IMG/VR virus record: IMGVR_UViG_3300042465_005589
Span: 254,165 to 318,164 of that record
Direction: 5' to 3' (one strand)
Length of the DNA: 64,000 nucleotides
Part shown: positions 41,486-63,998 of the stretch, one piece after another
How the letters are laid out: the number at the start of each line of letters is the position of its first letter
Numbering within the stretch: the first letter of the stretch is position 1
Made by a program: the position numbers and the translations under genes
The notes under the pieces: generated by a model
Told to the model about the DNA's origin: nothing
What the model saw: the letters and a program-made list of their open reading frames with translations, nothing else
Databases searched by the model: none

Positions 41486-42331
41486 TTAATGACATGGAAG
41501 TAAATTGTTAAAATTAACTATTCCGGTAATAACAGAATTAAACACTGAAATTATTTGATACCCATTTATTTGAGTAACATAATTACCATCGTTAATTAAT
41601 GATATGGTTTGCCCATTAGGGTCACTATAAATTGTTGCACCTATTTGTAGTGGAGTGTACATATAATAATTCTCACCACCAATTATATAAAAAGGAGGGG
41701 CCAATACATAATCTTCAACAATACATTTAATTAGTTGAGGACCATCAGCAATAAAATCAATAAATAAATGACCAATATCATCATAAATACCTGAACCCAT
41801 ATTAACTTCAGATAATACAGGAATTGTTGTTGTTGTAGTTGTAGTATGATTAATTGTGGTAGTAGTTGTCGTACAAGGACAACATTCTGTAGTTGTTGTT
41901 GTAGTATAAGGACCATTGATACAACAAGGGAATTCTGACACATAACAACTATCGTAAACTAAATCGTCTGCAATAAACGAATCTTGTACATTTATAAATA
42001 AATCTTCCCTAATTGGTAATATAAGAACTCCATCTGAATTTCTTAACATAAATTGACCAGCGTATCTACCAACTCTATTTGTATCTCTCGGAGTAAATTG
42101 ATAATATATATAATATTCAGGACCAGCATTTAAATCAACAAAAGTTTTTTCAACAAACCCCGCAGGTCTTGAACTTATTTTTGGAATACCGGTTTCTACG
42201 TCAACCATTGAGAAGAAAATGGCAGATTCTTCAATCATATCCATAAACTTATTATAGTCACTTCTTCCGTCTTTAACTACTTGTAATTTTAATACCGGTA
42301 AGGTTGCGTTTTTCTTTATAAAAAAATCCAT
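41486..42331 (-). CDS. Putative virion appendage protein (BppU-N-like domain, poly-Thr linker)
   Basis: MDFFIKKNATLPVLKL...YYQFT--DT---G-Y-GQF N-terminus; TTTTTTECCPCTTTTTTINHTTTTTTT linker. Confidence 0.55.
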   Translation of the reverse strand: MDFFIKKNATLPVLKLQVVKDGRSDYNKFMDMIEESAIFFSMVDVETGIPKISSRPAGFVEKTFVDLNAGPEYYIYYQFTPRDTNRVGRYAGQFMLRNSDGVLILPIREDLFINVQDSFIADDLVYDSCYVSEFPCCINGPYTTTTTTECCPCTTTTTTINHTTTTTTTIPVLSEVNMGSGIYDDIGHLFIDFIADGPQLIKCIVEDYVLAPPFYIIGGENYYMYTPLQIGATIYSDPNGQTISLINDGNYVTQINGYQIISVFNSVITGIVNFNNLLPCH

Positions 42332-42414
42332 CTATTGTTTTTATTTATAAATACTTTGATTTACAAAAATAAACAAATTAACTTTCTTTTCTTAAAAACT
42401 CATGATAAATATTT

Positions 42415-43518
42415 TTATAATATTGTTATGTCATCTAATTTACCCCAGTCAATTTCGCCATACCATTCATAAGTGTGGTATAATTCAAAATTAGGTTGTT
42501 TAATGTTAATTATGAAAAAACTATTTTTATTTGATTGAAATTTATGAATAAATTCCTCATCACCCATCTTAACTTTAAAAATATGGTCAAGAAACTGTTG
42601 GTCGGTTTCTTCCAATCCCCAATAAAATTCAACATTCAAAAATTTGTCAAATTTGTACATTTTAATATTTAATGGAATATTTTCCCCTTTAAATTGTACA
42701 AAATATTTTTTATTAAAAACTTCATCACCTTGAGACATTTCTATGTAATCTAAATAAGATTTGTAGGTATCTCTAACTGCCGGATAACTTACAAAATGTA
42801 AACATTCTACTTTAGAGATGTCTATATTTTGAAAATATGGTATTCTATGTTTTTCTTCGTCTAATGGGACGTATCTACCATCTTTTAAAAACATATGAGC
42901 ATATGCCGATTGTTCAATCCATGAAGGAAAATAATTCACACCTTTTCCAATGAGGTTAGTTAGGGCAAATTCAAGAGAATTTATATTATAATAATCTTCA
43001 GATGGTATATAAATAAGTCCGGTATTAACTTTTTCAGGAACTAACACTTCACTTTTAGGTTCATTAAAACAATATGAACTTTGACAATCTGGAAAATAAA
43101 ATGGTGTATTTGTATTTATTAAATTAATAACATTATCGGGTCTTCTAATAAAAAGAAGGTCGGTATCCATACCCAATATTTTTTTAGATTTAGAAAAAAA
43201 GAAATAATCAAAGGTTTTAATTTTATGCCATAAATTTATTGGGTTATTCCCAAGACGGTAACTCAAACAATTAGGATAATTCTTAATATATTGTTCAATT
43301 TCTTTATCAGCATCCGCTCGTTTAATTATTATTACATTTCTTATATCTGATAATAATTCAATATCCGAATCAGTTAAAGACCCGTCATCGTGAAGATAGA
43401 CCGGAAGAGATTTAAATTCTTCAAACTTCTGTAATGATTTAAAATTATTTATTGCTAATAATATATCTCTATTACATATTAGTGTGTGTATTTCTAATCC
43501 TTCAAAATTTTTATTCAT
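42415..43518 (-). CDS. GT-A fold glycosyltransferase with C-terminal accessory domain
   Basis: YLHDDG, DxD motif GMDTD, NTG and WIEQ motifs. Confidence 0.6.
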   Translation of the reverse strand: MNKNFEGLEIHTLICNRDILLAINNFKSLQKFEEFKSLPVYLHDDGSLTDSDIELLSDIRNVIIIKRADADKEIEQYIKNYPNCLSYRLGNNPINLWHKIKTFDYFFFSKSKKILGMDTDLLFIRRPDNVINLINTNTPFYFPDCQSSYCFNEPKSEVLVPEKVNTGLIYIPSEDYYNINSLEFALTNLIGKGVNYFPSWIEQSAYAHMFLKDGRYVPLDEEKHRIPYFQNIDISKVECLHFVSYPAVRDTYKSYLDYIEMSQGDEVFNKKYFVQFKGENIPLNIKMYKFDKFLNVEFYWGLEETDQQFLDHIFKVKMGDEEFIHKFQSNKNSFFIINIKQPNFELYHTYEWYGEIDWGKLDDITIL

Positions 43519-43541
43519 AATTAATTGTTTTTTGTATTATA

Positions 43542-44315
43542 TTATCCGGCGATATTCCATGGTTTAGTTCCATTAAGTTTCTCTTCATAATTTGAAATAA
43601 AAATTTCATTTATTTTTGAAGATAACGGACTAACACCATTACATGTTATCCCACTATTATAACTGGCAATTGACATAGACGAGCCTTCACCGGAACCAAT
43701 TGTTTCTAAATAGTTGTGACGAATATCAAACTCTTCAGTAAACACAGATAGGTCATCCCATATTTTAAAAAAATTTTCTTCAGTTCCTCTGTCTTTTTTA
43801 ATAATCCATTTACCTTCCAAATAGTGTTCTATATAATCTTCAGGATGACCTTCATGAAACACTTTTTTTAATTTAAAACCATTTTTTTCCGCAAAATCAA
43901 TACCTTCTTGACCATATTTAGTATTTCTTCTACCTTGTACTTCACAAGTACTAACATCGTCTGAACAATATGTGAACCCTATATTACCAAACGTTGCAAA
44001 AATATGTAGACCAGAGTTTATATCTGATAAAAAATCAATGTTATCAGTATCTTTAATAAAGACATCAGCATCTAAAAAAACTGCAGTGTCATAGTATTTT
44101 AAACATTCTTTCATCACCACTTTTTTTTCATGAAATGAAAAATATGGTTTAGTATATTCTATTACTGTTAACAAATTATTTGGTGTATAATGTTCCGGAG
44201 AATTAGTCATTACAAAAATATGATGTCCCATATCATTTATTTGTTTAATTAATGAATCTCCAAATGTTACATATTTTTCACCATATGTTAATGTACAAAA
44301 CGCAAAATTACTCAT
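43542..44315 (-). CDS. GT-A-like glycosyltransferase
   Basis: FLDADV DxD motif; start MSNF at 44315 gives an ATGA overlap; paralog of domain 2 of the upstream gene. Confidence 0.55.
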   Translation of the reverse strand: MSNFAFCTLTYGEKYVTFGDSLIKQINDMGHHIFVMTNSPEHYTPNNLLTVIEYTKPYFSFHEKKVVMKECLKYYDTAVFLDADVFIKDTDNIDFLSDINSGLHIFATFGNIGFTYCSDDVSTCEVQGRRNTKYGQEGIDFAEKNGFKLKKVFHEGHPEDYIEHYLEGKWIIKKDRGTEENFFKIWDDLSVFTEEFDIRHNYLETIGSGEGSSMSIASYNSGITCNGVSPLSSKINEIFISNYEEKLNGTKPWNIAG

Positions 44316-46042
44316 ATTTCCTCTATTAATGTCCAATCTTTATCCCCATACCAATCATAAGTGTGGTAAATTTTAATTTTATCTTTTTTATCAAAAAATA
44401 ACTCATTTGTTTTTTCACTATTAAAGTGATATACAACATCATTAATTTTAAACTCATGGTCTAAAAACTCAACATTATTTTTTAAATTCCAATTAAAATT
44501 TAAAACAAATAGATTATCATTTAATTCAAAAATTGAATAACTTAAATCTATCTTGTGTTCTTTAAATTGAATGTCTGATACCTTTTTTGAAATTAGTTTA
44601 CCCTCACTTAATTGTACTGTTTTTCTATCAGGAAAATTTTTAATATAATCACTAATAAACCCACCATAAAAGTTATATTTAATATCTTCACCAAGTTTAT
44701 TAGATATGTTGTGTGAATTAATTTTAAGTCCGCTTTTAGCTACACATAAACCAACAATATTACCCTCACCAACACCTATTTTATCCACCCCATTAATCAT
44801 TTCATGAGCATCTAAAGATGATGATAATTCTTTCCATGTATCTAAAAAAACTTTCCATTTATTTTCTTCTTTTGAAACAATTAAAACACCTTCTTGATAG
44901 TGATAAGCATCATTTATTGGGATATTTAATTTTTCGGATATACTTAACGCTAATTCACCATAACCCACAACCCTATTAGTAATGTCTTTACTTTCAAAAA
45001 AACCTCCGGAAGGTCTTGATATTAATCCCCAATCCCAAGATGGGTGAAATCCTGGTTTAATTATTCTAATTAAATTGGTGTAACAATTTTTATAATTTTT
45101 AAAAAATAATCTACAATCAGAATCAACATATACAACAGCATCTTCATATTTAAATCCCTCTTCAAAACAAATTAATTTATCATTATATGAGAATTTTTTA
45201 TTAGGATAATCTACTAATATAACATTATCTAAAGAATCATAGAATTCTTTTTGGTCTGTAACTATTAATATTTTTTGTTTAAAATAATTTAAATCAAAAG
45301 CCAATTTAACCGCGTTTTTATTAGCTGTTTCACCATGAGCAATAGTTGTAAAAATATAGTTTTGTTTTTTATAGTTTTTTTTACAACTATTATTTCCTTG
45401 TATATCTGTTGTAAAATCATTTTTAACTTTTACAATTCTTTCATTTGAAACATACACATTGAATTCAGATAATCTAATATATAATGCGGTATCAATTTGA
45501 TTATCTATATTAGTAAGTTTTTCGATTAATTTTTTTGCACCATTTGGGGATATTATTAAAGATGGTAAACACGTTACAATACCTTTAGGTATAGATAAGT
45601 TTTTACTAAATGGATGTTTTTCTACATCAGTATCACCATGACCTAAATAACAATAATCAAAATCATTAGGTAATTCAGATAAAATCATCTTTAATTTATC
45701 ATCAAATGAATTATCAATTTCCACATCATCTTCAAAAGTTATTGCAGGAGAATCTAATTCTGATATTTTTTGAAATAAATTAAGATAACTCATTAAAACC
45801 CCCAAACCACCTTGAGTCATTGATAATCCCCAAGCGGTTACTGTATCCATTAAAATATCTTGGATTGCATTTTCACTTAATATACCTTCTTTTAAAGTTC
45901 TTGGATTTATAGTAGACCCATCAACTGCGTCAAACCTTTGATAAATATTTTTTAAAATAGTACTTTTATTTAATTGATTTTCTATAAATAACTTCCTATC
46001 CGTTCTTTTTTCTAAATTAATATAAAAACAATGTTTTAGCAT
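44312..46042 (-). CDS. GT25-family glycosyltransferase fused to a second DxD domain and an accessory domain
   Basis: YINLEKRTDR, RFDAVDG, FEDD (GT25); YVDSD in domain 2. Confidence 0.75.
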   Translation of the reverse strand: MLKHCFYINLEKRTDRKLFIENQLNKSTILKNIYQRFDAVDGSTINPRTLKEGILSENAIQDILMDTVTAWGLSMTQGGLGVLMSYLNLFQKISELDSPAITFEDDVEIDNSFDDKLKMILSELPNDFDYCYLGHGDTDVEKHPFSKNLSIPKGIVTCLPSLIISPNGAKKLIEKLTNIDNQIDTALYIRLSEFNVYVSNERIVKVKNDFTTDIQGNNSCKKNYKKQNYIFTTIAHGETANKNAVKLAFDLNYFKQKILIVTDQKEFYDSLDNVILVDYPNKKFSYNDKLICFEEGFKYEDAVVYVDSDCRLFFKNYKNCYTNLIRIIKPGFHPSWDWGLISRPSGGFFESKDITNRVVGYGELALSISEKLNIPINDAYHYQEGVLIVSKEENKWKVFLDTWKELSSSLDAHEMINGVDKIGVGEGNIVGLCVAKSGLKINSHNISNKLGEDIKYNFYGGFISDYIKNFPDRKTVQLSEGKLISKKVSDIQFKEHKIDLSYSIFELNDNLFVLNFNWNLKNNVEFLDHEFKINDVVYHFNSEKTNELFFDKKDKIKIYHTYDWYGDKDWTLIEEI

Positions 46043-46048: not shown

Positions 46049-47296
46049 TTATAAATTACCGGTTATTCTATCACGCCAACCTTTTGACGTACTATATGGC
46101 CATACAACCCAATATTTTGGTTTTGATGTTGTTTGGAAATCTCTCCAAACTTTACAATATCCGTCATGGTCTTTCATCATAGCATTTATCTCATTAATAT
46201 CGGCATCTTTTCTATAAAGAGTTTCATCATTTTCATTATGAAATGCTACAACCCAAAATTCATAATCTTTTTCCGGTACTTGTTTAAATGAGATATCGAT
46301 ACAATGTTTGAAAATACTCGCAAAACTTGATAACCATTCTTCTTCCGTCTCATATATGGTAGGGTTTGGTGCGTATTTTTTATCTAAAGTATATTGTTGG
46401 ACAGCTCTATTTGAAAATTTAAGACCTGAATAAATTTCATAATCTTTTAATGTTCTTTCAGTTCCAAATCCATACTTACTAAAATCCATAGTAACTTCTT
46501 CACCGTCCATTCCAAAAAGCTGTCTATTCTTTTTGTGAGATAACTCATTCTTTTTACCCCACTCTTTATCATCATCCCATTGTTTGGTTCTACCCTTACG
46601 AGTATATTCGTGCCAAATAACGGTCTTATGTGGGTGGAATAAATCATATCCGTGAGTGAATGCTCTAACAGCAATTGATATTTCTTCCCCGTGAAAATAA
46701 AATTCAGGGTCGTGTTGAACCTCCACACTAAATTGACCTAATGTGAATGCCATGTGAGCAGAATAAAAACGAGAAGTGATTGGTTGTTTTAATTTTTCCC
46801 AACCAGGTATTGTTTCAGGTAAGAAGAATACCGCACCTTCAGGAATGAATCTATCAAAAGACATTCTCCACGGCTCTTTAACTCTACCTGCCGGGTCATT
46901 CTCGGGGTCAAATGATGAAACATACCCCGTTAACAAAGGTTTCTTAAATCCTTTCTTTTGAAGTTGTTTAATCATTTTGATTAAGGTAGTATCCCAATCT
47001 TTTTCAAATCTCATATGAGAATCTATTTGAAGTGTATACTCCTCACCATCATATAATTGTTGTACTTGATTTCTTGCCCAACAAACACCTTTAGCGTCGG
47101 AATACAAAACATCCTTAACTCTAAATCGTTTATCTTTTTTAAATTTTTCTAAATTATCAAACCCATCTTCAGGGTGATATTGACGACATATACCTATTCT
47201 TAAGTTTTTAGGTCTTTTAGCATTTTCAATCATGCTATCAAGTGTCGGGATAAGCTGGGGGTCACGATAGGAGGCTATCTGTACAAATATTTTCAT
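46049..47296 (-). CDS. GT60-like polypeptide N-acetylglucosaminyltransferase
   Basis: IFVQIASYRD, GVCWAR, LQIDSHMRF, FHGEEI, GYDLFHP...WHEY match the GT60 (Skp1/mucin GlcNAc transferase) pattern. Confidence 0.8.
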   Translation of the reverse strand: MKIFVQIASYRDPQLIPTLDSMIENAKRPKNLRIGICRQYHPEDGFDNLEKFKKDKRFRVKDVLYSDAKGVCWARNQVQQLYDGEEYTLQIDSHMRFEKDWDTTLIKMIKQLQKKGFKKPLLTGYVSSFDPENDPAGRVKEPWRMSFDRFIPEGAVFFLPETIPGWEKLKQPITSRFYSAHMAFTLGQFSVEVQHDPEFYFHGEEISIAVRAFTHGYDLFHPHKTVIWHEYTRKGRTKQWDDDKEWGKKNELSHKKNRQLFGMDGEEVTMDFSKYGFGTERTLKDYEIYSGLKFSNRAVQQYTLDKKYAPNPTIYETEEEWLSSFASIFKHCIDISFKQVPEKDYEFWVVAFHNENDETLYRKDADINEINAMMKDHDGYCKVWRDFQTTSKPKYWVVWPYSTSKGWRDRITGNL

Positions 47297-47435: not shown

Positions 47436-49364
47436 TTAGTTTATAAAAGAAAGAAATTTTTTATTACTACTACTGTAAAGTACCCAAGAAGCACCATAGT
47501 TAGAAGATATTTGAGTTTGAAACGCAATTGTAGTTCCAAGCATATATTGTCCAGAATTAGATATATCTGTTTTGATAATAGAACTACCAAAAGTATTCGT
47601 AGTCCAACTAACACCAAAATTATTTGTGGTAATAACTCTATTATTAGTAGCACCTACTATTCCATATCTTCCATCATAACTTAACTTAAGGTCTTCATTA
47701 AAATCTTGACTAACAATACTCATTATTGACCAAGTTGCACCAAAATCAGTACTTCTGTAACTATTTCCAACTGCTGAAACTAACATCATATATAATCCAT
47801 TTCCTGATACTGCAACACCTTGAAAATTACTAGAATTTGCGGCTGATTGCGAAGGAAAAATATTTAATGTTATATTTGTAAAAGTTATTCCATAATTTGT
47901 AGATAGTAAAACATATTTTAATGAACTTGAATCATAACCTGCAATAATAACATATTGACCATCCCACGATACACTAGATTGGATAATTAATGTAAAAGCC
48001 ACAGGAAATGATGCAGGACTCCAACTTGTTCCAAAATCACCACTTCTTAAAAGAGTGCCTCCTGATTCAACATACATATATTGTCCATTTTTAGATATTG
48101 AAGTCTCCCCAATAAAACCAGAACCCACCCCAATAGGTGTTGAGTAAGAATTACCATAATCTGAAGATATCTTTACTTGTAAAGGAGAAGTTGCTCCTGC
48201 AGCCGCTATAGAGTATTGGTAATTATCGGAAGCATTTATTCCATAATTTGTAGTGACGCCAACAGACGTTAGTTGACTTATTTCAACAAGTGTATCATCA
48301 TATATTCTAAAAAATGGAGATGAATTAGATGTACCTAACATATCCCCTACTCCAAAAACAGGTGTAGGTATTGATGTTGGAGTAGGTGTTGGAGTCGCAG
48401 TTGAGGTTGGTGTTGCCGTTGGTGTAGGTGTAGATGTCGGAGTAGATGTCGGAGTTGATGTTGGCGTCGCAGTCGGTGTTGGTGTGGATGTCGGAGTAGA
48501 TGTTGGTGTTGATGTTGGTGTTGCCGTTGGAGTTGATGTTGGAGTCGCAGTTGGTGTAGGTGTAGGTGTTGGAGTCGCAGTTGGTGTTGCCGTTGGTGTA
48601 GGTGTTGGTGTAGGTGTAGGACAAGGATTTAAAATTTGACAAGTATTAATATCCGGTTGACTATTTAATAAAATGTATGAATACTGATTCGTTGAGGTTA
48701 TTGGTGATATTGATGTTACACAACCAACATATCCACTACTTTGAACATAATAAACCCCTGACAATGGAGAATAAGATGTAGGAATATTATAAACTATAAA
48801 AGTGTTTGATGGGTTACAACTATCTTGGAAATACCCCACAATAGGTGCTAATGTTTGTGTTGGAGTAGTTGTTGGTGTTGCAGTAGGTACTGGTGCACAA
48901 GTATTATCAACACACACCTCATTAATCAGAATGTTTACCCCCACATCAGCAGAAGGTAATCTACCGCAATAATATAAGGTAGTCCCTGATTGAATAACAC
49001 TGTTTAACACAACGTTATTACATTGGGTTAAACTAAAGTTTAAAGTTCCCGAAGTTGTATTTTCAAATGATATACAATTACAAACAACAACCATTGTTGG
49101 AGTCGGAGTTGGTGTTGTTGTTGGAGTTGGTGTTGGTGGTAATGGACAACTTTCTAATAAAAATTCTTCACACCCTATTGAATCAGTCACAACAACTAAA
49201 ACCTGACTAGCACCTTCTAATTGAGAAGGGATTGGAAGTTCTAATGTTGGAGGAACAGAAACAACACCGGTTGCAACCACATAACAATACGTTAATGTTA
49301 AATCACATATTGATATATCAAATGGTGAGTGTCCGTTTAAACTGGTTATTTCTATTACTTGCAT
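47436..49364 (-). CDS. Pro-Thr repeat virion-type protein with C-terminal Asp-box (BNR) beta-propeller
   Basis: Start MQVIEI at 49364 (motif at 49369-49376); three PT tracts; six S/T-x-D/N-(F/Y)-G-x-(S/T)-(W/F/Y) repeats. Confidence 0.7.
48361..48620 (-). repeat. Pro-Thr(-Ser/Ala) coding repeat, ~86 aa
   Basis: [20 protein letters not shown]...PTSIPTP in the translation. Confidence 0.9.
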
Positions 49365-49468
49365 TACAATAAATATAGTTAGAATTATTTTACCATAAAT
49401 ACTTAACAATATTAAAGTTTACTATGGAACTTTATTAGTAATTTATTATTTTTATAATAAAAAAAAAT

Positions 49469-55324: not shown

Positions 55325-55777
55325 ATGGCAATATATTGGTTTACAGGTCAGCCCGGAGCAGGTAAGACCACATTAGCAAAACAACTTAAAGATTATCTAC
55401 ACCCAAGTAATGTAATGCTTGTTGATGGAGATGACATTAGAGATGTGTTTCAGAATAAAGATTACTCTGAAAATGGCAGAAGAAAAAATATTGAGAAAGC
55501 ACAAGACATCTCATTATTTTTAGATTCAAAAGGATTTGATGTAATAGTTTCATTAGTATCTCCTTATAAAGACCAACGTGATGAATTTAAAAACAAACAT
55601 AATGTTTTAGAGTTTTACATTCACACCGAAGATATTAGAGGAAGAGAAGATTATCACGTATCTAACTATGAACCACCAACTGAAAATTTTGTGGATGTGG
55701 ATACAACAAATGTTATTGAACAAATCTCTATAGGAATAATTATAAATAAAATTAATGAATATAAATTAAATGGATAA
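55325..55777 (+). CDS. cysC: Adenylylsulfate (APS) kinase
   Basis: WFTGQPGAGKTT, LVDGDDIR, VSLVSPY, YEPP. Confidence 0.88.
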   Translation: MAIYWFTGQPGAGKTTLAKQLKDYLHPSNVMLVDGDDIRDVFQNKDYSENGRRKNIEKAQDISLFLDSKGFDVIVSLVSPYKDQRDEFKNKHNVLEFYIHTEDIRGREDYHVSNYEPPTENFVDVDTTNVIEQISIGIIINKINEYKLNG

Positions 55778-56180
55778 TTGGGAAAGAAAAACACACGTAC
55801 AAGCAGCATTCGCTTCATCATCGTCAAATAAAAAATATTCAATGTTTGTAGGTAGATGGCAACCGTGGCATCATGGTCATAGAGCATTAATTGACCAACA
55901 ATTGAATAGAGATAAAAATATCCTACTATGTGTTAGAGATGTTGAAATTGATGATAAAAATCCGTTTTCAACAGAATGGGTTATTGAAAACTTAAACAAA
56001 GAATTAAAAGACCTAATTGATGAAGGAAGATTAGTGATTCAGGTTATTCCGGATATAGAAAGTGTTAATATTGGTAGAGGTGTTGGATATGATGTTTATG
56101 AACATTTCCCTCCTGAGGATATTAAAAACATTTCTGCAACAAAAATTAGAGAACAAATGAAAAAAGACGGTAAACTATAA
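55770..56180 (+). CDS. HxGH-class nucleotidyltransferase (candidate minimal ATP sulfurylase)
   Basis: GRWQPWHHGH, KNPF, ISATKIR; coupled between cysC and DUF2061. Confidence 0.7.
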   Translation: MDNWERKTHVQAAFASSSSNKKYSMFVGRWQPWHHGHRALIDQQLNRDKNILLCVRDVEIDDKNPFSTEWVIENLNKELKDLIDEGRLVIQVIPDIESVNIGRGVGYDVYEHFPPEDIKNISATKIREQMKKDGKL

Positions 56181-56395
56181 TGGTAGAAGTAAAACGACAC
56201 ATAGGTAAAGCCGTTAGTTATAGAATGTTAGGGACATTACAAACCTGTATAATCTCATACTTATTTACAGGAAATTTTTTGATTTCAGGTAGTATCGGAT
56301 TAACAGAATTATGTATAAAACCATTAATATATTTCCTACACGAAAGAGTGTGGTATAAATGGATAAAGTTTGGATTAAAAGAAAATAAAGAATAA
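56180..56395 (+). CDS. DUF2061-like small membrane protein
   Basis: KAVSYRMLGTLQT...TG...IG...E...K...YFLHERVW. Confidence 0.75.
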   Translation: MVEVKRHIGKAVSYRMLGTLQTCIISYLFTGNFLISGSIGLTELCIKPLIYFLHERVWYKWIKFGLKENKE

Positions 56396-56447: not shown

Positions 56448-57146
56448 ATGGAAAATAATATTTGTGTTTATTTACATAAAAAACCTAATGGTGATATATT
56501 TTATGTGGGAATTGGGACTAATAAAAGACCTTATGAAAAATTTAGAAAAAATGTATATTGGAAAAATATAACAAATAAATACCCTAATTATATTATTGAA
56601 ATAATTGAAGAAAATTTAACTTGGGAAGATGCCTGTATTATTGAAAAACAATTAATTAGAAAATACGGTAGAAAATGTGATGGTGGTATATTATGTAATA
56701 TAACTTTAGGTGGTGATGGGGTTTATGGTTTAAAACATTCTCAAGAAACTAAAGAAAAATTAAAAAAATTATCAACCGGAAATAAAAATTGTGTTGGATT
56801 TAAACATACTGAAATAACTAAAGTAAATATGAGTAAATCTCATTTAGGTAAAATAACACCAAAAGAAGTTAGAGAAAAAATGTCAAAAACTCATTTAGGT
56901 AGACCAGGTAGAGAATCAGATAAATTAAATGTTAAAAAGGCACATATTAAAAATATAGGTAGAGTTCAAAATGAGGATGAAAAAGAAAAAAGAGCCAAAA
57001 AATTATGTAAACCAATTGAGGTTAATGGTGTAATATATGAATCAATAAAACAATATTCTGAAATAACTAATATTAACCGAAGTAAAGTTTGGCGAAATTT
57101 AAAAGACGAAAAAAATAAAAACTACAAATACATAAATAAAAAATGA
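56448..57146 (+). CDS. GIY-YIG-like homing endonuclease with NUMOD3 repeats
   Basis: CVYLH...FYVGIG...R...EKQLI...CNITLGGDG; HSQETKEKL and HTEITKVNMSKSH; promoter motif at 56422-56429. Confidence 0.8.
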   Translation: MENNICVYLHKKPNGDIFYVGIGTNKRPYEKFRKNVYWKNITNKYPNYIIEIIEENLTWEDACIIEKQLIRKYGRKCDGGILCNITLGGDGVYGLKHSQETKEKLKKLSTGNKNCVGFKHTEITKVNMSKSHLGKITPKEVREKMSKTHLGRPGRESDKLNVKKAHIKNIGRVQNEDEKEKRAKKLCKPIEVNGVIYESIKQYSEITNINRSKVWRNLKDEKNKNYKYINKK

Positions 57147-58018
57147 ATGTAATATTTTCTATAGAAGGTGGATTAGGAAAATCCATAATGGGTACGGCAG
57201 TATTAAAAGCAATAAAAAAACAATATAGTAAAGCTAACATAATTGTTGTTAGTAGTTATCCGGATGTCTTTATTGGTAATCCAAACGTTAATAAAGTTTT
57301 GACTCACGAAACAATGAGTGGGATATATGAAAAATATATCATGGGTAAAGAAGCAAAAGTATTTGTTTCTGACCCATACTCAACTTCAGATTATATTACC
57401 GAAGAAAAACATCTAATTCAGTTATGGTGTGAAATGTATGGTCTAAATTACAATGGTGAAAAACCTGAATTATTTATAAGTAAAGCCGAAAAACAATACT
57501 TTGAAGGGTTCTATAAGTTAGATAAACCAATTATGGTTATTCAACCTCATGGGGGTGCATTTAACCAACCGTTAAAATATAGTTGGACAAGAGATATACC
57601 TCAACCAATTATGCAAGACATTATAAATCATTTTGCAAATGATTACGCTATCTTACACGTTAAACGAGAAGACCAAATTATTTACGAAAATACGTTCCAA
57701 GCATTAGATTCATTTAGAAGTATTGCTGTATTATTGAGTATGGCAACAAAACGATTATTAATCGATAGTAGTGTTATGCACATTGCGACGGCATTAAATT
57801 TACCATCAGTGGTGACTTGGGTTGGGACAAATCCGGAAGTATTTGGTTTTGATATTCACAATAATATTGTTGCCAATGAACCAACCAAAACACCTGATTT
57901 AAATCATCCACATTATTCTAAATATCTGTTATTCCAAGATATTAGCACTATACCTTATAACGACCTATATGAAGTATTTGATACTCAAAAAATTATAGAA
58001 GCGATTAATCAACAATAA
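57143..58018 (+). CDS. GT9-like (GT-B) glycosyltransferase
   Basis: GGLGKSIM, IQPHGG, IDSSVMHIATALNLPSVVTW. Confidence 0.75.
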   Translation: MNVIFSIEGGLGKSIMGTAVLKAIKKQYSKANIIVVSSYPDVFIGNPNVNKVLTHETMSGIYEKYIMGKEAKVFVSDPYSTSDYITEEKHLIQLWCEMYGLNYNGEKPELFISKAEKQYFEGFYKLDKPIMVIQPHGGAFNQPLKYSWTRDIPQPIMQDIINHFANDYAILHVKREDQIIYENTFQALDSFRSIAVLLSMATKRLLIDSSVMHIATALNLPSVVTWVGTNPEVFGFDIHNNIVANEPTKTPDLNHPHYSKYLLFQDISTIPYNDLYEVFDTQKIIEAINQQ

Positions 58019-58052: not shown

Positions 58053-61000
58053 TTATTTATTTATTTTATTTTGTAATATTTCAATACCATTCCAATTTTT
58101 AATAGCATCTTTATCTTTTCTTGTTCCTATGATAAGAACGTTGTATTCTAAATCCTCGTTAGCAAATATAGTTACTTTTGTTAAATCTTCATCTACTTTT
58201 CCATAAGCAATTCCAAAACCTTCTTTGGGCGTTACCCAAATTTGAGTGTTTTCATTTAGGAATTTGAAATAATCTGGCAATTCAATTTCAGCAACACCAT
58301 CTACTACTTTAACAACATATCTATAAATATTATCTCCAGCAGTAGGCGATTCAACAAACGAGTGTTGTAAGTAATGAGTTTTGTTTTTTATAGGTTCTGG
58401 GTGCTTAATTCTAAACGTACCACTTGTTTTTGATAATGCTTCAACAAATGTTGTGTTATTCGCAGATGCAGAAAGGTTACTACCAATGATATGTGAGTTA
58501 TAAAAACCAGTTATATTATTATTTGTACCACCTATAATAGAATTATACTTGGCTTTATAACCACTTGAAGAACAAATTGCATTACTCTTACCACCACCAA
58601 TAAAATTAGAACAAGTATATTCAGAATTATATGCAAATATTTGGTTGGATATTCCGCCAGTTATTGTATTATTTTGAGATTCCGTAGCGTAACTTATATT
58701 GTTTATAGCGTTATTATAACCTCCCAAAATAGAGTTACCACAAGTATAAGAAGAATTAGCACTATTTCCACAAATTGAGTTACTCTGACCTCCCCCAATA
58801 ATACTTTTGATATTATGAATCATTCTATTTGTATAACCACCACTAATGGTATTCCAAGTTCCGTAATTTGTATAATTACTTCTACCACCGCCAATTATTG
58901 AATAGTCAGAACAATTAACGTTATATTGACCACCACCAATTGTTGAAAGACCACCAGATGCAGTATTACCACAACCACCACCAATATTTGAAAGAGTACC
59001 AAAAGCAATATTGCCTTGACCTCCACTAATAGTTGATTTACTACCAGAAGCAGTATTAGATTGACCACCACCAACAGTTGAATCACTATTAGAAGCAGTA
59101 TTATTTCTACCACCACTTATTGTTGAAACTAAACCAGAAGCTACATTATATTGACCACCACCAACTGTTGATGAATTGCCAGAAGCGGTATTAGGAGCTG
59201 AATAATAAGCAGAATTATAAAAATTTAATCCGCCACCACTTACTGTTGAACCAATACCAGAAGCAACATTTGATTGACCACCACCAACTGTTGAACGACC
59301 ACCAGAAGCACTATTTTGATAACCACCTCCTATTGTTGCATATGAACTTGAAGCAGTATTATTAAAACCTCCACCAACTGTTGAACGATAACCAGAAGCA
59401 GTATTTAATCTACCCCCACTAACTGTAGAATAACCATTGGAAGCAATATTACCACAACCACCTCCAACTGTTGAATAATTACTTGAAGCAGTATTATTTC
59501 TACCACCACCAATTGTTGCGTATTGATTTGAAGCAATATTACCACAACCACCTCCAATTGTGGCATAATTAGAAGCAGTATTTTGATAACCACCAGAAAC
59601 TGTTGAAAAACTACCATAAGAAGTGTTACATCGACCACCACCAATTGTTGAACAAGGACCTGAGGCGGTATTACATAAACCACCAGCAATTACCCCTAAA
59701 GTTCCGTTAACAGAATTACTATCTCCACCACCAATAAAACCTTTTACACAAATAATACTATTTGAAATACCTCCACCAATTGTGGAGTATGATGCTTTAC
59801 TACAATTTAATTTACCACCACCAATCGTTCCAAAAGTTGATGCTGTTGAACGGTTCTGTTTTCCACCACTTATGGTTGAACCTCCCGAATCATTTTGAAC
59901 AAAATTATCGGAACCACCACCAATGAAAGATATCTCACCTTCCGAGCAGTTTCTATAACCTCCACCTATTGTTGATAATCTTCCTGCGTTAAGACAAGTA
60001 ATAGCGCCTGTCAAATTTCCCGTTGTTACATTAAATGTTCCACCTGATGAATTATGTCCAATACCACCACCAATCGTTACACCTAAAGAGCAACATTCGT
60101 TTGTAGGCGATTGAATTATATTTCTTTGACCACCAGAGATTATAGAGTGTCTTGAATTTGTAATATTACAAAAACCTCCACCAACTGTTGAATATGCCCC
60201 TGATGTAGTATTTTGAAAACCACCACCAATTGTTGAATATTGACAACAAGCTGTGTTAGATTTGCCACCACCAATAAATGAGAAAACACCACTAACTGTG
60301 TTACATCGACCACCACCAATTGTTGAACTATTGCCAGTAGCAATATTAACACTACCACCCCCTACTGTTGATTGATAACTACAAGCAGTATTGTTTTGTC
60401 CACCACCAATTGTTGAACTACTACCCCAAACAGTGTTAGATTTACCACCTCCAATTGTTGCAAAACCAATAGAAGGATTTGCAACATTACAATAACCACC
60501 TCCAATTGTATTACCACCAGACGCACCATAAACTACCAAAGAGTTTGTATAAATAAGGTTACAATTACCACCAGCAATAACATCCCCAATTTTTGGGTAA
60601 GCATTATTATAATTTTGTGATGGAAATATTCTATTATATTTACCACCACCAATAAATGAAAAATAACCAGACGCCAAATTACTACAACCACCACCTATTG
60701 TTGAATAATTACAAGAAGCAGTATTAATAAAACCACCACCAACTGTTGAAGCAATATTTGAAGCAATATTATCATAACCACCGCCAATTGTTGAATAAGT
60801 ATTAGAAGCAGTATTAGCTTGACCACCACCAATTGTTGAACGAGTACCAGAAGCGATATTAGTAACACCACCACCAATAAAAGAATAAGCACCTGTTGCA
60901 CAGTTTCTAAATCCTCCACCAATTGTTGATAATCTACCAGCATTACAACAAGCAATCGTTCCGGTTAAAGTTCCTGTAGTCGCATTAAATGTTCCACCTG

Positions 61001-63998
61001 ATGTATTGTGACCAATACCACCACCGATTGTTACACCTAACGAACAACATTCGTTTGTTGGTGATTGAATTATATTTCTATGTCCACCACCAATAAATGA
61101 CATTCTAGCGTTTGTTCTATTACAATATCCACCAGATATTGTTGAGGTATTTCCAGAAGTATTATTTCTAAATCCTCCACCAATAAACCCACAACGAGCA
61201 TTGTTTACATTACAAGAACCACCAACAACTGTTGAATCATAACAAGAAGAGGTGTTAAAACGACCCCCGCTAACAGTTGAAAAACATCCTGATGCTGTAT
61301 TGCAACAACCTCCACCAACTGTTGCTCGTCCATTAGAAGCAGTATTATATAAACCACCCCCTACTGTTGAAGAGTAACAAGAAGAAACATTACATTGTCC
61401 TCCACCAACGGTTGCACGACTACAAGAAGCGGTATTCCATACTCCTCCTCCAATTGTTGAATAAGCCCCTCCAGAACAATTTAATGACCCACCACCAATT
61501 GTTGCCCCTGTTATAGAAGCATAATTACAATATCCACCAGCAATTGTTGAATAGTTAGCCGTTGCACGGTTTCTAAATCCACCACCTATGGTTGATAATC
61601 TACCACCTTCAAAACAAGTAATTGTACCTGATAAAATACCTGTTGATGTTGTAAATGTCCCTCCGGATGTGTTATGTCCAATACCTCCACCAATAGTTGC
61701 ACCTAAAGAACAACATTCGTTTGGTGTTGATAGAAGTATATTTCTTTGACCACCACCAATTGTTGAGAATCTAGAATTTAAAATATTACGACATCCTCCA
61801 TTAATTATTGAATAATTACCACGAGATGAGTTAAAGCTACCACCACCAATAAATGTATAATCACCTATGGCACAGTTTCTAAAACCACCGACAATAGTTG
61901 ATAATTTACCTGCATCACAACAAGCAATCGTTCCGGTTAAAGTTCCTGTAGTCGCATTAAATGTTCCACCTGATGTATTGTGACCAATACCTCCACCGAT
62001 TGTTACCCCTAAAGAACAACATTCATTTGTTGGTGATTGGATTACATTTCTTTGACCTCCACCAATAAATGAGAATCTAGCATTTGTCGTATTTCCACTA
62101 CCTCCTAAAGATGCGGAATAATTTCCTGATGCAGTATTTCCCACACCACATCTAATTGATGAGTTAGAACAAGTTCCTGTTATAATAACCGCAGATGAAC
62201 CAACATTTATACCTGAAGTTCCACTTGTACCTCCGGTACCATTCGTTCCCGAAGTTCCTGATGTTGCACTTGTACCTGATGTACCGCTAGTTCCCGTTGT
62301 TCCTGAAGTTCCACTTGTACCTCCGGTACCATTCGTTCCCGAAGTTCCTGATGTTGCACTTGTACCTGATGTACCGCTAGTTCCCGTTGTTCCGGAAGTT
62401 CCACTTGTACCTCCGGTACCATTCGTTCCTGATGTTCCTGAAGTTCCACTTGTACCTGAAGTACCGCTAGTCCCTGTTGTTCCGGAAGTTCCTGATGTTG
62501 CACTTGTACCTGATGTACCGCTAGTTCCCGTTGTTCCTGAAGTTCCACTTGTACCTCCGGTACCATTCGTTCCTGATGTTCCTGAAGTTCCACTTGTACC
62601 TGAAGTACCGCTAGTCCCTGTTGTTCCGGAAGTTCCTGATGTTGCACTTGTACCTGATGTACCGCTAGTTCCCGTTGTTCCGGAAGTTCCACTTGTACCT
62701 CCGGTACCATTCGTTCCCGAAGTTCCTGATGTTGCACTTGTACCTGAAGTTCCTGAAGTACCGCTTGTCCCTGAAGTTCCTGAAGTACCATCTGTACCGC
62801 TAGTTCCCGAAGTACCATCTGTACCGCTAGTTCCTGATGAACCACTTGTACCTGAGGTACCTGTAGTACCACTTGTTCCACTTGCTCCGTTAACACCTGA
62901 AGAACCGCTAGTTCCTGATGTTCCACTTGTACCTCCGGTACCATTCGTTCCCGAAGTTCCCGTTGTTCCTGAAGTTCCACTTGTACCTCCGGTACCATTC
63001 GTTCCCGAAGTTCCTGATGTTGCACTTGTACCTGAAGTACCGCTAGTTCCTGTTGTTCCTGATGTTCCTGATGTTCCTGATGTTCCTGAAGAACCACTTG
63101 AACCTGAAGTTCCACTAGTCCCTGACGAACCGCTTGAACCTGAACTTCCACTAGTACCTGATGAACCACTTGAGCCAGATGTACCTGAAGTTCCACTAGT
63201 CCCTGACGAACCTGATGTACCCGAAGTCCCACTAGTCCCTGAGATAAATGGTGATAATGATGTTGTTACTTGAGAAACTGTAGCATCCTCAAAATAACAA
63301 GTCATTGTTTTCGATGCTAAATCACGAGCATAAAATTTAACAACAATTCTATCTGTTACAGACACATTTGTTGCTGGTACTGGTACTGAAAATAAATAAA
63401 GTTCAATTACAGTACCTTCAGTTATTGAATGTGGTACTACACTATTTGAGGCAATTAATGTTTCAGTACCACCTGTAGTTCTAACATAAATCTCAGCATA
63501 TATTTTCGGTGTACCTCCATTTGAACTCATACTCACATATTGCTCAAAATTCCAATTACCCGCAGGTATTGTTGTTACACTTGGGTCATTAGATATTGTC
63601 GCAAATGAACCAATAAATTGGTTCCCTCCACCTGTCGCGGTTAAGGTTGTTCCAGCACCAATATAGATATCTCTATCCATCACATAATATGTTGGAATTG
63701 TAGATGCCGACGATGGGTTAAAATAATATACTAATCCCGTTGAAAATCCATCTTGCCCTGACGTTCCTGACGAACCACTTGTTCCACTAGAACCTGATGT
63801 ACCACTTGAGCCAGATGTTCCCGAAGAACCACTTGAACCTGACGTACCCGAACTACCGCTTGAGCCAGATGTACCTGACGAACCACTTGTTCCACTAGAA
63901 CCTGATGTACCACTTGAGCCAGATGTTCCCGAAGAACCACTTGAACCTGACGTACCCGAACTACCGCTTGAGCCAGATGTACCTGACGAACCACTTGA
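58053..63998 (-). CDS. Giant fibre protein, 5'-truncated by the window (>1980 aa)
   Basis: Frame stays open upstream of the 63683 call to the window edge. Contains two (Gly-Thr/Ser-Ser)n blocks, a globular domain, dozens of N-x-AS-G-x-x-ST-(I/V)-GGG repeats and a C-terminal FRIKHP...QHSFVESP domain. Confidence 0.8.
59943..62078 (-). repeat. Four dispersed 210-bp (70-aa) Cys-rich cassettes
   Basis: Copies at about 59943-60152, 60897-61106, 61563-61772, 61869-62078, each encoding [21 protein letters not shown]...LSTI-GG. Confidence 0.85.
62211..63240 (-). repeat. Gly-X-Y (GTS) coding repeat with 90-bp and 144-bp tandem duplications
   Basis: 62221-62310 vs 62311-62400 and 62401-62544 vs 62545-62688 each differ by about one base on visual comparison. 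Confidence 0.85.
63766..63997 (-). repeat. 108-bp tandem duplication in the second GSS/GTS block
   Basis: Unit starts at 63766, 63874 and 63982 (partial); the first two appear identical. Confidence 0.85.

What the first reader, a model, noticed from the sequence alone, without database searches (positions are those of the whole stretch)
41486..63998. Candidate phage-encoded virion O-glycosylation, methylation and sulfation system
Seen: about nine glycosyltransferase domains, two FkbM domains, a sulfotransferase and PAPS-supply genes are interleaved with three structural-type proteins made of hydroxyl-rich tracts (poly-Thr at 41825-41906, Pro-Thr at 48361-48620, GTS and STxGGG repeats in the fibre); the sheath also has a poly-Thr insert. 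Established: GT60 and Aah/TibC families glycosylate Ser/Thr of proteins; virion glycosylation is known in some mycobacteriophages and giant viruses. Inference: the island builds a methylated, sulfated glycan coat on tail and fibre proteins (shielding, stability or mimicry of sulfated polysaccharides). I know of no described sulfated phage glycoprotein, and the sulfur genes would then be virion-modifying rather than metabolic auxiliary genes.
Basis: partly seen in the sequence, partly recalled or inferred. Interest (0 to 1): 0.92.

Follow-up and report, generated by a model that had tools for sequence, protein, structure and literature searches.

The report
Jumbo-phage tail glycosylation and sulfation island
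An uncultured giant bacteriophage carries a variable block of sugar-adding, methylating and sulfating enzyme genes next to threonine-rich tail proteins, which most likely means it coats its own tail and fibres with decorated sugars, something shown so far for very few phages and never with sulfate.

Summary
The window is the last 64 kb of a 318-kb myovirus contig. Six glycosyltransferase domains pass Pfam cut-offs (GT25, GT60, DXD sugar-binding, GT4, two GT9), and three more are only inferred. Two FkbM methyltransferases, a PAPS-type sulfotransferase and an APS-kinase-like protein are real. The supposed ATP sulfurylase looks like an NMN adenylyltransferase by sequence.

Comparison with about 300 related viral loci shows two modules:
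- A conserved frame runs mucin-like Pro-Thr protein, GT60, variable cassette, then a BppU-like poly-Thr tail protein. The cassette has 41 architectures in 74 loci.
- An accessory operon (sulfotransferase, GT9, APS kinase, nucleotidyltransferase, DUF2061) lies beside a repeat fibre in 69 of 80 loci.

None of the 2,653 neighbouring ORFs has four or more predicted transmembrane segments, so no flippase, polymerase or lipid-carrier transferase candidate is present. No DNA-hydroxymethylation genes were found in the window.

Virion O-glycosylation is therefore well supported by context. Sulfation of the virion glycan is plausible but unproven. I rate it a new variant of a known kind, with interest about 0.7.

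The parts
27577..30963 (-). Tail sheath (1128 aa) with a Thr/Ser-rich loop (nt 29947-30048) bracketed by conserved Cys residues. It is a candidate acceptor on the tail surface.
   Evidence: PHROG tail sheath 2.5e-55; Pfam sheath domains; translation; loop conserved in composition in 65 of 69 distinct homologues.
41486..42331 (-). Poly-Thr tail protein (281 aa). It has a conserved N-terminal Ig-like, BppU-N-like domain (aa 1-123), then a Thr6-Cys motif-Thr6-Thr7 tract, then a variable C-terminal part.
   Evidence: model pLDDT 80-94 for aa 1-123; BFVD matches to BppU N-terminal, baseplate, minor tail and tail fibre proteins; TP901-1 and NF5 baseplate chains in PDB, weak.
42415..43518 (-). Probable GT-A glycosyltransferase (367 aa) with a C-terminal domain of about 100 aa that it shares with the 576-aa protein.
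   Evidence: No Pfam hit for the window protein itself. Invariant DGS and DxD. 6 of 35 family members hit PF03407, best 4.7e-4. Relatives are fused to FkbM or GT25. C-terminal similarity is 30%. Found only in this phage among the 80 loci.
43542..44336 (-). Putative DxD transferase (264 aa), a paralogue of the middle domain of the next protein.
   Evidence: No family or PDB hit. 25% identical to aa 227-452 of the 576-aa protein. hhalign 95% to two cassette families of related phages. Invariant DxD.
44312..46042 (-). Three-part protein (576 aa): GT25 domain, DxD domain, and the shared C-terminal domain.
   Evidence: Pfam GT25 3.8e-17; internal paralogy.
46049..47296 (-). GT60-family glycosyltransferase (415 aa), the conserved anchor of the island and the proposed initiating enzyme acting on Thr.
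   Evidence: PF11397 9.4e-72 and phrog_24687 1.5e-168. D-S-H motif visible in the translation. 391 viral contigs encode relatives.
47436..49334 (-). Mucin-like protein: conserved Cys-containing N-terminal module, Pro-Thr linkers, and a C-terminal Asp-box (BNR-like) propeller. The real start is probably the ATG at 49334, not the TTG at 49409.
   Evidence: five Asp-box motifs; family members run from 170 to more than 3315 aa with up to 63% T+S+P; the gene ends 23-140 nt upstream of GT60.
49469..53812 (+). Multi-domain enzyme (1447 aa): FkbM methyltransferase, DXD sugar-binding GT, GT4-type GT-B and GT9-type GT-B domains.
   Evidence: Pfam hits all above gathering score.
53812..54489 (+). FkbM-family methyltransferase (225 aa).
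   Evidence: PF05050 2.6e-08; TIGR01444 3.6e-10.
54494..55312 (+). PAPS-dependent sulfotransferase (272 aa). Its acceptor is unknown.
   Evidence: PF13469 1.5e-22. The PAPS-binding motifs align with TPST1. 169 viral contigs encode relatives.
55325..55777 (+). Short APS-kinase-like protein (150 aa).
   Evidence: PF01583 5.5e-17. All 21 PDB hits listed at E<=0.01 are APS kinases or PAPS-synthase kinase domains, and the P-loop, DGDxxR and SP(Y) motifs are present. It scores below NCBIfam cut-offs.
55770..56180 (+). HxGH nucleotidyltransferase (136 aa), overlapping the kinase gene by 8 nt. Candidate minimal sulfate adenylyltransferase, or alternatively an NMN adenylyltransferase.
   Evidence: Profile best hits are NadM and archaeal NMNAT at 4.5e-09; no ATP sulfurylase hit. 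It accompanies the kinase in 50 of 51 loci. One PHROG family (phrog_10255) covers both proteins.
56180..56395 (+). DUF2061 small predicted membrane protein (71 aa), part of the sulfation operon.
   Evidence: PF09834 5.6e-19; present in 51 of 80 sulfotransferase loci.
57143..58018 (+). GT9-fold glycosyltransferase (291 aa), the most constant partner of the sulfotransferase.
   Evidence: Pfam GT9 3.4e-05. Model pLDDT 91.8. Top structural matches are GT9 3tov at 2.7e-13, then WaaF, WaaC and TibC. Present in 74 of 80 loci.
58053..63998 (-). Giant tail fibre (more than 1981 aa, cut by the contig end): proline-free Gly-Thr-Ser collagen-like region, about 1200 aa of Ser/Thr/Gly/Asn-rich 15-residue repeats, and a C-terminal domain.
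   Evidence: Pfam Collagen 1.8e-33. PHROG collagen-like minor tail and tail fibre families. Composition and period. Frame open to base 63998.

Best explanation
The region encodes a phage-borne, cytoplasmic protein O-glycosylation system that decorates the phage's own tail proteins.

Proposed mechanism (inferred unless marked as shown):
1. The soluble GT60 enzyme puts a first sugar on Thr in mucin-like tracts. By analogy with characterised GT60 enzymes this would be alpha-GlcNAc. The candidate acceptors are the sheath loop, the BppU-like poly-Thr protein, the Pro-Thr protein encoded just upstream of GT60, and probably the Gly-Thr-Ser collagen-like fibre.
2. A fast-evolving set of soluble transferases extends the glycan. 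In this phage they are the GT25 protein, two or three DxD proteins and the 1447-aa multi-GT enzyme.
3. FkbM methyltransferases cap the glycan.
4. A second, accessory operon beside the fibre gene supplies a GT9-fold transferase and a PAPS-dependent sulfotransferase. It also carries an APS kinase, perhaps with the NMNAT-fold nucleotidyltransferase acting as a minimal sulfate adenylyltransferase. I propose that it adds a sulfated sugar to the fibre.

Shown: the domains, the tracts, the conserved synteny, the cassette turnover and the absence of membrane machinery.
Inferred: the acceptors, the sugars, the order of the steps and every catalytic activity.

Likely roles: stiffening and protecting long linkers, and stabilising a proline-free collagen helix, as Thr glycosylation does in the Riftia cuticle collagen (from my own knowledge, not from a tool). 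The glycan may also vary the virion surface.
For: Family evidence:
- The GT60 match is strong. Characterised GT60 enzymes make GlcNAc-alpha-O-Thr on mucin-like proteins (PMC9472816; PMC3769586).

Synteny around GT60 in 80 related loci:
- GT60 is 75-100% identical, the Pro-Thr protein sits directly upstream, and the poly-Thr protein sits downstream.
- In 74 loci the slot between GT60 and the poly-Thr gene holds 41 architectures and 58 protein clusters. 70 of the 74 are co-directional.
- Cassette genes include GT2, GT7C, GT10- and GT11-like, PLOD-type GT, HtrL/YibB and GT25-like transferases, carbamoyltransferase, methyltransferases and an epimerase.
- The same arrangement (PT protein, 32-nt gap, GT60) recurs in a distant GT60 lineage.

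Acceptor candidates are virion proteins:
- The sheath.
- The BppU-N-like poly-Thr protein.
- The collagen-like fibre.
- The sheath loop keeps its Thr/Pro/Ser composition while its sequence drifts.

Against other targets:
- 0 of 2,653 neighbouring ORFs have four or more predicted transmembrane segments.

Sulfation operon:
- Within 10 kb of the sulfotransferase are GT9 in 74 of 80 loci, the repeat fibre in 69 of 80, and the APS kinase in 61 of 80.
- GT9 fold. Sulfotransferase PAPS motifs. Kinase motifs. A PHROG family that spans both the kinase and the nucleotidyltransferase.

Experimental hint:
- XacN1 encodes GT60 and GT9 homologues, and its authors report at least two glycoproteins by proteomic analysis.
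Against: - There is no chemical evidence for this phage, which is known only from metagenomes.
- Much of the co-occurrence comes from one phage clade with conserved gene order, so shared ancestry inflates it.
- In the XacN1-type and other more distant GT60 loci only 8 of 18 have a PT-rich ORF within 10 kb.
- GT25, GT9 and HtrL/YibB families are best known from lipopolysaccharide synthesis.
- GT60 lies near the DNA polymerase gene both here and in XacN1.
- Thr/Pro tracts can be plain flexible linkers.
- 22-23 of 37 fibre homologues lack the sulfation operon nearby, so it is dispensable for the fibre.
- The sulfotransferase's nearest solved relatives act on tyrosine or polyketides.
- The nucleotidyltransferase looks like NMNAT.
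- Three of the nine GT domains lack family-level support.
Confidence: 0.5

Rival explanations
1. The enzymes remodel host envelope glycans (lipopolysaccharide core, capsule or exopolysaccharide) during infection, for example to block superinfection or change the cell surface. The Thr-rich tracts are unmodified linkers that merely lie nearby.
For: - GT25, GT9 and HtrL/YibB are classically LPS-core families.
- The weak NCBIfam hit of the sulfotransferase to NoeE points to an oligosaccharide-acting enzyme.
- A recent survey of huge phages files glycosyltransferases under auxiliary or envelope functions.
- LPS-core transferases are soluble or peripheral and need no flippase of their own.
Against: - GT60 has no known envelope-glycan role.
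- No ORF with four or more predicted transmembrane segments in 160 loci, so no initiating lipid-carrier transferase, flippase, polymerase or ligase candidate.
- The gene-to-gene contact is with Thr-rich virion proteins, with 23-140 nt gaps on the same strand.
- The sulfation operon follows a fibre gene.
Confidence: 0.2
2. The transferases hypermodify phage DNA with sugars, as described for phage gene clusters that glycosylate 5-hydroxymethylcytosine. This would protect the genome from host nucleases.
For: - Phage GT clusters related to LPS and teichoic-acid enzymes attach mono- to trisaccharides, including heptose, to DNA (10.1101/2023.12.21.572611).
- GT60 sits next to the DNA polymerase gene here and near it in XacN1.
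- All the enzymes are soluble.
Against: - Those clusters depend on a cytosine methyltransferase plus a 5mC dioxygenase. No such domain, and no hydroxymethylase, was found in any window ORF scanned.
- Methyl-, carbamoyl- and sulfo-transferases and fucosyltransferase-like enzymes fit a complex glycan better.
- The tightest linkage is to Thr-rich proteins.
- Only 64 of the 318 kb were seen, so the precursor genes could lie elsewhere.
Confidence: 0.07
3. The glycosylation part is right, but the sulfotransferase does not act on a virion glycan. It sulfates tyrosines of a protein (TPST-like) or a small molecule or host metabolite, and the kinase is an auxiliary sulfur-metabolism gene.
For: - The best solved relatives are protein-tyrosine sulfotransferases 1 and 2, CurM and StaL.
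- Homologous sulfotransferases occur in Synechococcus phages without the kinase or GT9 as neighbours.
- 19 of 80 sulfotransferase loci lack the kinase.
Against: - The sulfotransferase has a GT9-fold transferase beside it in 74 of 80 loci and a repeat fibre within 10 kb in 69 of 80. This suits a sugar-then-sulfate sequence on the fibre.
- The similarity to TPST is only 31 bits and is confined to the PAPS-binding core.
Confidence: 0.12

Closest known systems
GT60 polypeptide alpha-GlcNAc-transferases of protists (T. cruzi TcOGNT on mucins; Dictyostelium Gnt1 on Skp1)
   Same: Same CAZy/Pfam family (PF11397, 9.4e-72), and the gene lies beside genes for Thr-rich mucin-like proteins. In T. cruzi the GlcNAc is then extended by further transferases, which matches the cassette logic seen here.
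   Different: This is a phage enzyme with no signal or membrane anchor. The acceptors would be virion proteins in the bacterial cytoplasm. Activity and sugar are untested, and no solved GT60 relative was found by sequence.
Glycosylated mycobacteriophage virions, and the glycoproteins reported for Xanthomonas jumbo phage XacN1
   Same: Phage-encoded transferases lie near structural genes and virion proteins carry glycans. XacN1 has a 49%-identical GT60 and a GT9 next to a 3313-aa protein with PT linkers.
   Different: Here the system is far larger: up to about ten transferase domains and a hypervariable cassette. It has mucin-like acceptors of up to more than 3300 aa, and methyl-, carbamoyl- and sulfo-transferases. 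It is spread over hundreds of metagenomic contigs. No search of the paper library found a sulfated phage virion.
Giant-virus capsid and fibril glycosylation (chlorovirus A064R-type multi-domain GT plus methyltransferase; mimivirus collagen glycosylation)
   Same: Virus-encoded, host-independent, soluble multi-domain enzymes combine GT and methyltransferase domains. Collagen-like substrates occur too, and PLOD-type GT domains appear in related loci. The comparison itself rests on my own knowledge and the review PMC9614988 listed, which I did not read.
   Different: The host is bacterial and the virion is tailed. The linkage would be O-linked to Thr tracts rather than atypical N-linked. A sulfation module is present.
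Autotransporter heptosyltransferases Aah/TibC (GT9) acting on AIDA-I/TibA repeats
   Same: A GT9-fold enzyme is encoded next to a very long Ser/Thr-rich short-repeat protein. TibC appears among the structural matches (E about 2e-07, TM 0.59-0.67).
   Different: LPS heptosyltransferases and an uncharacterised GT9 match better (2.7e-13 to 1e-09). The protein is about 100 residues shorter than TibC. The TibC iron-finger and dodecamer features were not examined. The sequence profile finds no GT9 structure at all.
Bifunctional PAPS synthases (ATP sulfurylase plus APS kinase)
   Same: A kinase with APS-kinase motifs is translationally coupled to a nucleotidyltransferase of the same superfamily as ATP sulfurylase. 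The pair travels with a sulfotransferase, and one PHROG family spans both proteins.
   Different: The nucleotidyltransferase is only 136 aa. By sequence it is NMNAT-like, not sulfurylase-like. The kinase is short and below curated cut-offs. A DUF2061 membrane protein of unknown role is added.

Membership tests
CAZy GT60 / Pfam PF11397 | Sequence match to the family model above the curated threshold | tested here: met
   242.8 bits against a cut-off of 21, E 9.4e-72.
CAZy GT60 / Pfam PF11397 | GT-A metal-binding D-x-H/D motif | tested here: met
   A D-S-H motif is visible in the translation. This is by inspection only; no structure was made.
CAZy GT60 / Pfam PF11397 | UDP-GlcNAc:polypeptide (Thr/Hyp) transferase activity | not testable with these tools
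   Needs an enzyme assay. Only the neighbourhood of Thr-rich proteins supports it.
GT9 heptosyltransferases | GT-B fold closest to GT9 structures | tested here: met
   Model pLDDT 91.8. The top 10 PDB matches are all GT9 (3tov, 1psw, WaaC, TibC). Pfam GT9 scores 23.7 bits against a cut-off of 22.
Aah/TibC protein heptosyltransferases (subgroup of GT9) | Closer to TibC/Aah than to LPS heptosyltransferases | tested here: not met
   3tov, WaaF and WaaC (2.7e-13 to 1e-09) outrank TibC (about 2e-07).
Aah/TibC protein heptosyltransferases (subgroup of GT9) | Iron-finger motif and dodecameric assembly | not tested
   Not examined. The protein has 291 aa against about 380-390 resolved residues per TibC chain.
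PAPS-dependent sulfotransferases (PF13469) | Family match and PAPS-binding motifs | tested here: met
   81.4 bits against a cut-off of 27. Both PAPS-binding motifs align with TPST1.
APS kinase (CysC) | P-loop, DGDxxR and (F)ISP motifs, and family score | tested here: inconclusive
   The motifs are present and all 21 PDB hits listed at E<=0.01 are APS kinases or PAPS-synthase kinase domains. Pfam is passed. NCBIfam scores of 65 bits are below the 127-139 cut-offs, and the C-terminal third does not align.
ATP sulfurylase (Sat/CysD) | Sequence membership of the 136-aa nucleotidyltransferase | tested here: not met
   Pfam ATP-sulfurylase scores only 17.3 bits against a cut-off of 24.3. A profile of 31 homologues hits NMN adenylyltransferases (4.5e-09) and no sulfurylase.
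Lipid-carrier-dependent surface polysaccharide pathways (O-antigen or capsule type) | Initiating polyprenyl-phosphate transferase, flippase, polymerase or ligase (polytopic membrane proteins) | tested here: not met
   0 of 2,653 ORFs in 160 loci have four or more hydrophobic segments, by a simple hydropathy scan.
Phage DNA sugar-hypermodification clusters | Cytosine methyltransferase plus 5mC dioxygenase (or hydroxymethylase) with the GTs | tested here: not met
   No such Pfam or PHROG hit in any window ORF scanned. The other 254 kb of the genome were not seen.
Tail fibre/baseplate proteins with a BppU-type N-terminal anchor | N-terminal domain fold similar to BppU-N | tested here: inconclusive
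   BFVD gives 29 matches at E<=1e-3, several of them named BppU-N, baseplate or tail fibre. PDB matches to TP901-1 BppU are weak (E about 0.02), and Ig-like folds are common. No Pfam or PHROG hit.

The most novel reading that the evidence does not exclude
A widespread clade of uncultured jumbo phages, possibly infecting Bacteroidota, builds a mucin-type glycan coat on its tail sheath and fibres with a self-contained cytoplasmic pathway. GT60 starts the glycan and hypervariable, serotype-like transferase cassettes diversify it. In a subset the glycan is sulfated with PAPS made by a minimal phage pathway, in which a 134-aa NMNAT-fold protein acts as a new kind of ATP sulfurylase. This would be the first sulfated phage glycoprotein.
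Probability: 0.22. Interest if true: 0.9.

Novelty: new variant of a known kind. Interest (0 to 1): 0.7.

Why it matters
Glycosylated phage particles are known from only a handful of cases. Here the same logic appears in hundreds of environmental jumbo-phage contigs. The conserved initiating enzyme is one otherwise characterised in protist mucin and Skp1 glycosylation. The acceptor-like proteins contain up to 63% Thr+Ser+Pro, and the enzyme cassette turns over as fast as bacterial O-antigen loci do.

If the reading is right:
- Phage surfaces would have their own variable glycan types, with consequences for adsorption, stability, grazing and recognition.
- The sulfur genes in such phages would serve virion building rather than host metabolism.
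- The system would provide a compact toolbox of soluble protein-O-glycosylating, methylating and sulfating enzymes, and a candidate minimal PAPS pathway.

Tried and rejected
- Near-identical DNA in the GenBank phage collection: only a 3% low-identity match, so no annotated close relative exists.
- Sequence search of GT60, the Pro-Thr protein's propeller and the fibre C-terminal domain against solved structures: nothing useful.
- Profile searches against the PDB for the GT9-like family, the DxD family and the 367-aa family: no hits. The GT9 call therefore rests on the predicted fold, and the other two stay unproven.
- ATP-sulfurylase identity of the 136-aa protein: rejected at sequence level. 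A large-database search showed only that it belongs to a family of at least 8,000 'cytidyltransferase-like' proteins of about 134 aa. The longer members carry an unknown N-terminal extension, not DUF2061.
- Specific Aah/TibC kinship: not supported.
- A single co-inherited island: rejected. The sulfation operon lies within 10 kb of GT60 in only 15 of 80 sulfotransferase loci, and fibre homologues often lack it.
- Simple DNA-repeat origin of the Thr tracts: codons are mixed.
- tRNA genes: none in the window.
- Literature: DUF2061 turned up nothing relevant, and I found no paper on sulfated phage particles.
- Host: only a weak hint. Three of six MAG contigs carrying the GT60 gene are binned as Bacteroidota, two of them as Saprospiraceae.

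Full report
**What the window is.** The 64-kb window has about 30% G+C and encodes a contractile-tailed phage.
- Structural genes: baseplate wedge and hub, tail tube, and a 1128-aa tail sheath.
- Replication genes: ribonucleotide reductase, DnaB-like helicase, UvsX-like recombinase, gp32-like SSB and a family-B DNA polymerase.
- The window is identical to the last 64 kb of a 318,164-bp IMG/VR contig, so this is a jumbo phage, and the window end is the contig end.
- It has no close relative among deposited phage genomes.

**Check of the observation.**
- Three Thr6-7 blocks lie in the 281-aa ORF.
- A Pro-Thr/Ser repeat of about 80 residues, plus shorter PT linkers, lies in the ORF upstream of GT60.
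- The fibre has a collagen-like stretch of about 325 residues that is 34% Gly, 32% Thr, 29% Ser and contains no proline. It is followed by about 1200 residues of S-T-I-G-G-G repeats with a period of 15.
- The sheath has a Thr/Ser loop.
- A scan of all long reading frames found such tracts in these four proteins only.

Enzyme calls that pass curated thresholds are GT25, GT60 (9.4e-72), a DXD sugar-binding GT, a GT4-type domain, two GT9 domains, two FkbM methyltransferases, a Sulfotransfer_3 enzyme and an APS-kinase domain. The remaining three 'GT domains' are weaker.
- The 264-aa protein and the middle of the 576-aa protein are paralogues with an invariant DxD, but they have no family or structure match.
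- For the 367-aa protein, a minority of family members weakly hit nucleotide-diphospho-sugar transferase models. Elsewhere this module is fused to FkbM or GT25 domains.

**Gene layout.** Two tightly packed, divergently transcribed gene strings meet at about 49.4 kb.
- Minus strand: Pro-Thr protein, GT60, the GT25 protein, two DxD proteins, the poly-Thr protein, then the DNA polymerase.
- Plus strand: multi-GT enzyme, FkbM, sulfotransferase, APS kinase, nucleotidyltransferase, DUF2061, a GIY-YIG homing endonuclease and GT9. This string ends face to face with the fibre gene.

**Comparative evidence, module 1 (GT60).**
- GT60 relatives occur on 391 viral contigs. I analysed the 80 best, which are 75-100% identical.
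- The order is conserved: Pro-Thr-rich protein, GT60, variable slot, usually an HtrL/YibB-type transferase, then the poly-Thr protein.
- In 74 loci the slot has 41 different architectures drawn from 58 protein clusters, with 2-10 genes, and it is nearly always on one strand.
- Representatives include GT2, GT7C, GT10- and GT11-like, PLOD-type and GT25-like transferases, carbamoyltransferase, methyltransferases and an epimerase.
- The three genes in this phage's slot occur in no other locus, even where GT60 is 96% identical.
- The upstream protein family has a conserved N-terminal module. Thr/Pro/Ser linkers follow, and family members run from 170 to more than 3315 residues with up to 63% T+S+P. 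C-terminal domains are interchangeable; the one here is a five-Asp-box propeller. The gene ends 23-140 nt before GT60.
- The downstream protein keeps a nearly invariant 137-residue N-terminal domain, then a Thr run with a Cys motif, and then variable Thr blocks and C-termini.
- Its N-terminal domain is confidently predicted as an Ig-like sandwich. Its viral structural neighbours include proteins named BppU N-terminal domain, baseplate component, minor tail, tail fibre and tailspike.
- In a distant GT60 lineage a three-PT-repeat protein again ends 32 nt upstream of GT60. In XacN1 a 3313-aa protein with PT linkers follows the baseplate genes, next to the GT9 and GT60 genes.

**The sheath loop.** More than 599 viral contigs encode this sheath. 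Among 69 distinct full-length homologues (62-96% identical overall), 65 keep a loop of about 55 residues bracketed by conserved Cys residues. The loop's sequence drifts between poly-Thr and Pro-Thr/Ser while its composition is kept. Four homologues carry a Ser/Thr-rich insert of about 135 residues instead. Codons within the tracts are mixed. This pattern suggests selection on composition, as expected for a glycosylation or spacer tract on an exposed part of the tail.

**Comparative evidence, module 2 (sulfation).**
- The sulfotransferase occurs on 169 viral contigs.
- Within 10 kb of it are the GT9-fold enzyme (74 of 80 loci), a homologue of the fibre's 15-residue-repeat region (69 of 80), the APS kinase (61 of 80), and the nucleotidyltransferase and DUF2061 (51 of 80 each). 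GT60 is that close in only 15 of 80.
- Conversely, only 14 of 37 fibre homologues have the sulfotransferase within 8 kb. The operon is therefore an accessory that almost always sits beside such a fibre.
- The GT9-like protein folds confidently (pLDDT 91.8). It matches GT9 structures best, with LPS heptosyltransferases ahead of TibC.
- The kinase has the P-loop, DGDxxR and SP(Y) motifs, and all 21 PDB hits listed at E<=0.01 are APS kinases or PAPS-synthase kinase domains. It is short and below NCBIfam cut-offs.
- The nucleotidyltransferase is NMNAT-like by sequence. Even so, it overlaps the kinase gene, follows it in 50 of 51 loci, and shares a PHROG family model with it.
- The sulfotransferase keeps both PAPS-binding motifs. 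Its nearest solved relatives are tyrosine and polyketide sulfotransferases, so the acceptor cannot be read from sequence.

**Weighing the explanations.**
- For self-glycosylation of virion proteins: the known specificity of GT60; the tight and recurrent contact between GT60 and Thr-rich proteins that are, or resemble, tail parts; the compositional conservation of the sheath loop; and the glycoproteins reported for XacN1.
- Against a lipid-linked surface polysaccharide pathway: no polytopic membrane protein in 2,653 neighbouring ORFs.
- Against DNA sugar modification: the methyltransferase and dioxygenase genes such clusters need are absent from the window, although most of the genome was not seen.
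- The main weaknesses are the lack of any chemistry, the phylogenetic non-independence of most loci, and the LPS pedigree of several enzyme families.
- I put about 0.6 on virion protein glycosylation as such, and about 0.5 on the full statement as given.
- I put about 0.25-0.35 on sulfate ending up on a virion glycan.

**Novelty.** Phage-encoded virion glycosylation is a known kind of system (mycobacteriophages, hints in XacN1, giant viruses). The following appear to be undescribed in the literature I could search:
- the GT60 and mucin-like architecture;
- the O-antigen-like cassette turnover;
- the association with methyl-, carbamoyl- and sulfo-transferases;
- the compact kinase, nucleotidyltransferase and DUF2061 set.

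I therefore rate it a new variant of a known kind.

Noticed in passing
window 56448-57146 (+): A GIY-YIG/NUMOD3 homing endonuclease sits between the DUF2061 and GT9 genes. It is found at that place in this phage but in very few of the 80 related sulfotransferase loci, so it looks like a recent mobile insertion into the operon.
   Followed up: partly
window 58053-63998 (-): The fibre reading frame is still open at the last base of the window, which is also the end of the 318-kb contig. The listed GTG start at 63683 is therefore not the real start, and the protein is longer than 1981 aa.
   Followed up: partly
window 10805-17707 (-) and 18026-23041 (-): Two giant ORFs (2300 and 1671 aa) lie between the SSB gene and the baseplate hub gene. 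Neither has any Pfam or PHROG match or any Thr-rich tract. They are presumably tail or baseplate proteins of unknown type.
   Followed up: no
window 55325-56395 (+); PHROG phrog_10255: One 230-position PHROG profile matches the APS-kinase-like protein with its first 92 positions and the 136-aa nucleotidyltransferase with its last 97. This suggests that fused versions exist. The nucleotidyltransferase family has at least 8,000 members of about 134 aa in metagenomes, and a few sources label them 'adenylylsulfate kinase'.
   Followed up: partly
window 29947-30048 (sheath) and 41822-41908 (poly-Thr protein): The Thr runs are tied to conserved cysteine motifs: N-P-C ... C-Y around the sheath loop, and E-C-C-P-C or P-C-P-S-C-P after the first Thr run of the poly-Thr protein family. 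These could be disulfides or metal sites framing the tracts.
   Followed up: no
window 42415-42750 and 44312-44650 (C-terminal ends of the 367-aa and 576-aa proteins): Two otherwise different enzymes share a C-terminal domain of about 100 residues (30% identity, ending H-T-Y-x-W-Y-G). In other metagenomic proteins the 367-aa module is fused to FkbM or GT25 domains. It may be a targeting or acceptor-binding domain.
   Followed up: partly
L196, L200, L203, L239 (sheath homologues): In four sheath homologues the Thr-rich loop is replaced by a Ser/Thr-rich insert of about 135 residues at the same position.
   Followed up: no
L299-L304 (genome contigs): GT60-bearing contigs of this phage type are binned into MAGs. 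Three of the six are labelled Bacteroidota (two Saprospiraceae, one of them a 230-kb contig). The polymerase's nearest cultured relatives are Salinibacter and Nostoc phages. This is a weak hint at a Bacteroidota host.
   Followed up: no
window 47436-49409 (-): The mechanical TTG start adds a hydrophobic 25-residue leader that homologues lack. The conserved start is the ATG at 49334, so there is no signal peptide or membrane anchor.
   Followed up: yes
L055 and relatives; XacN1 locus L002 10409-12706: A carbamoyltransferase lies next to GT60 both in some relatives of this phage and in XacN1. This suggests that carbamoylated sugars are part of the repertoire in two distant lineages.
   Followed up: no
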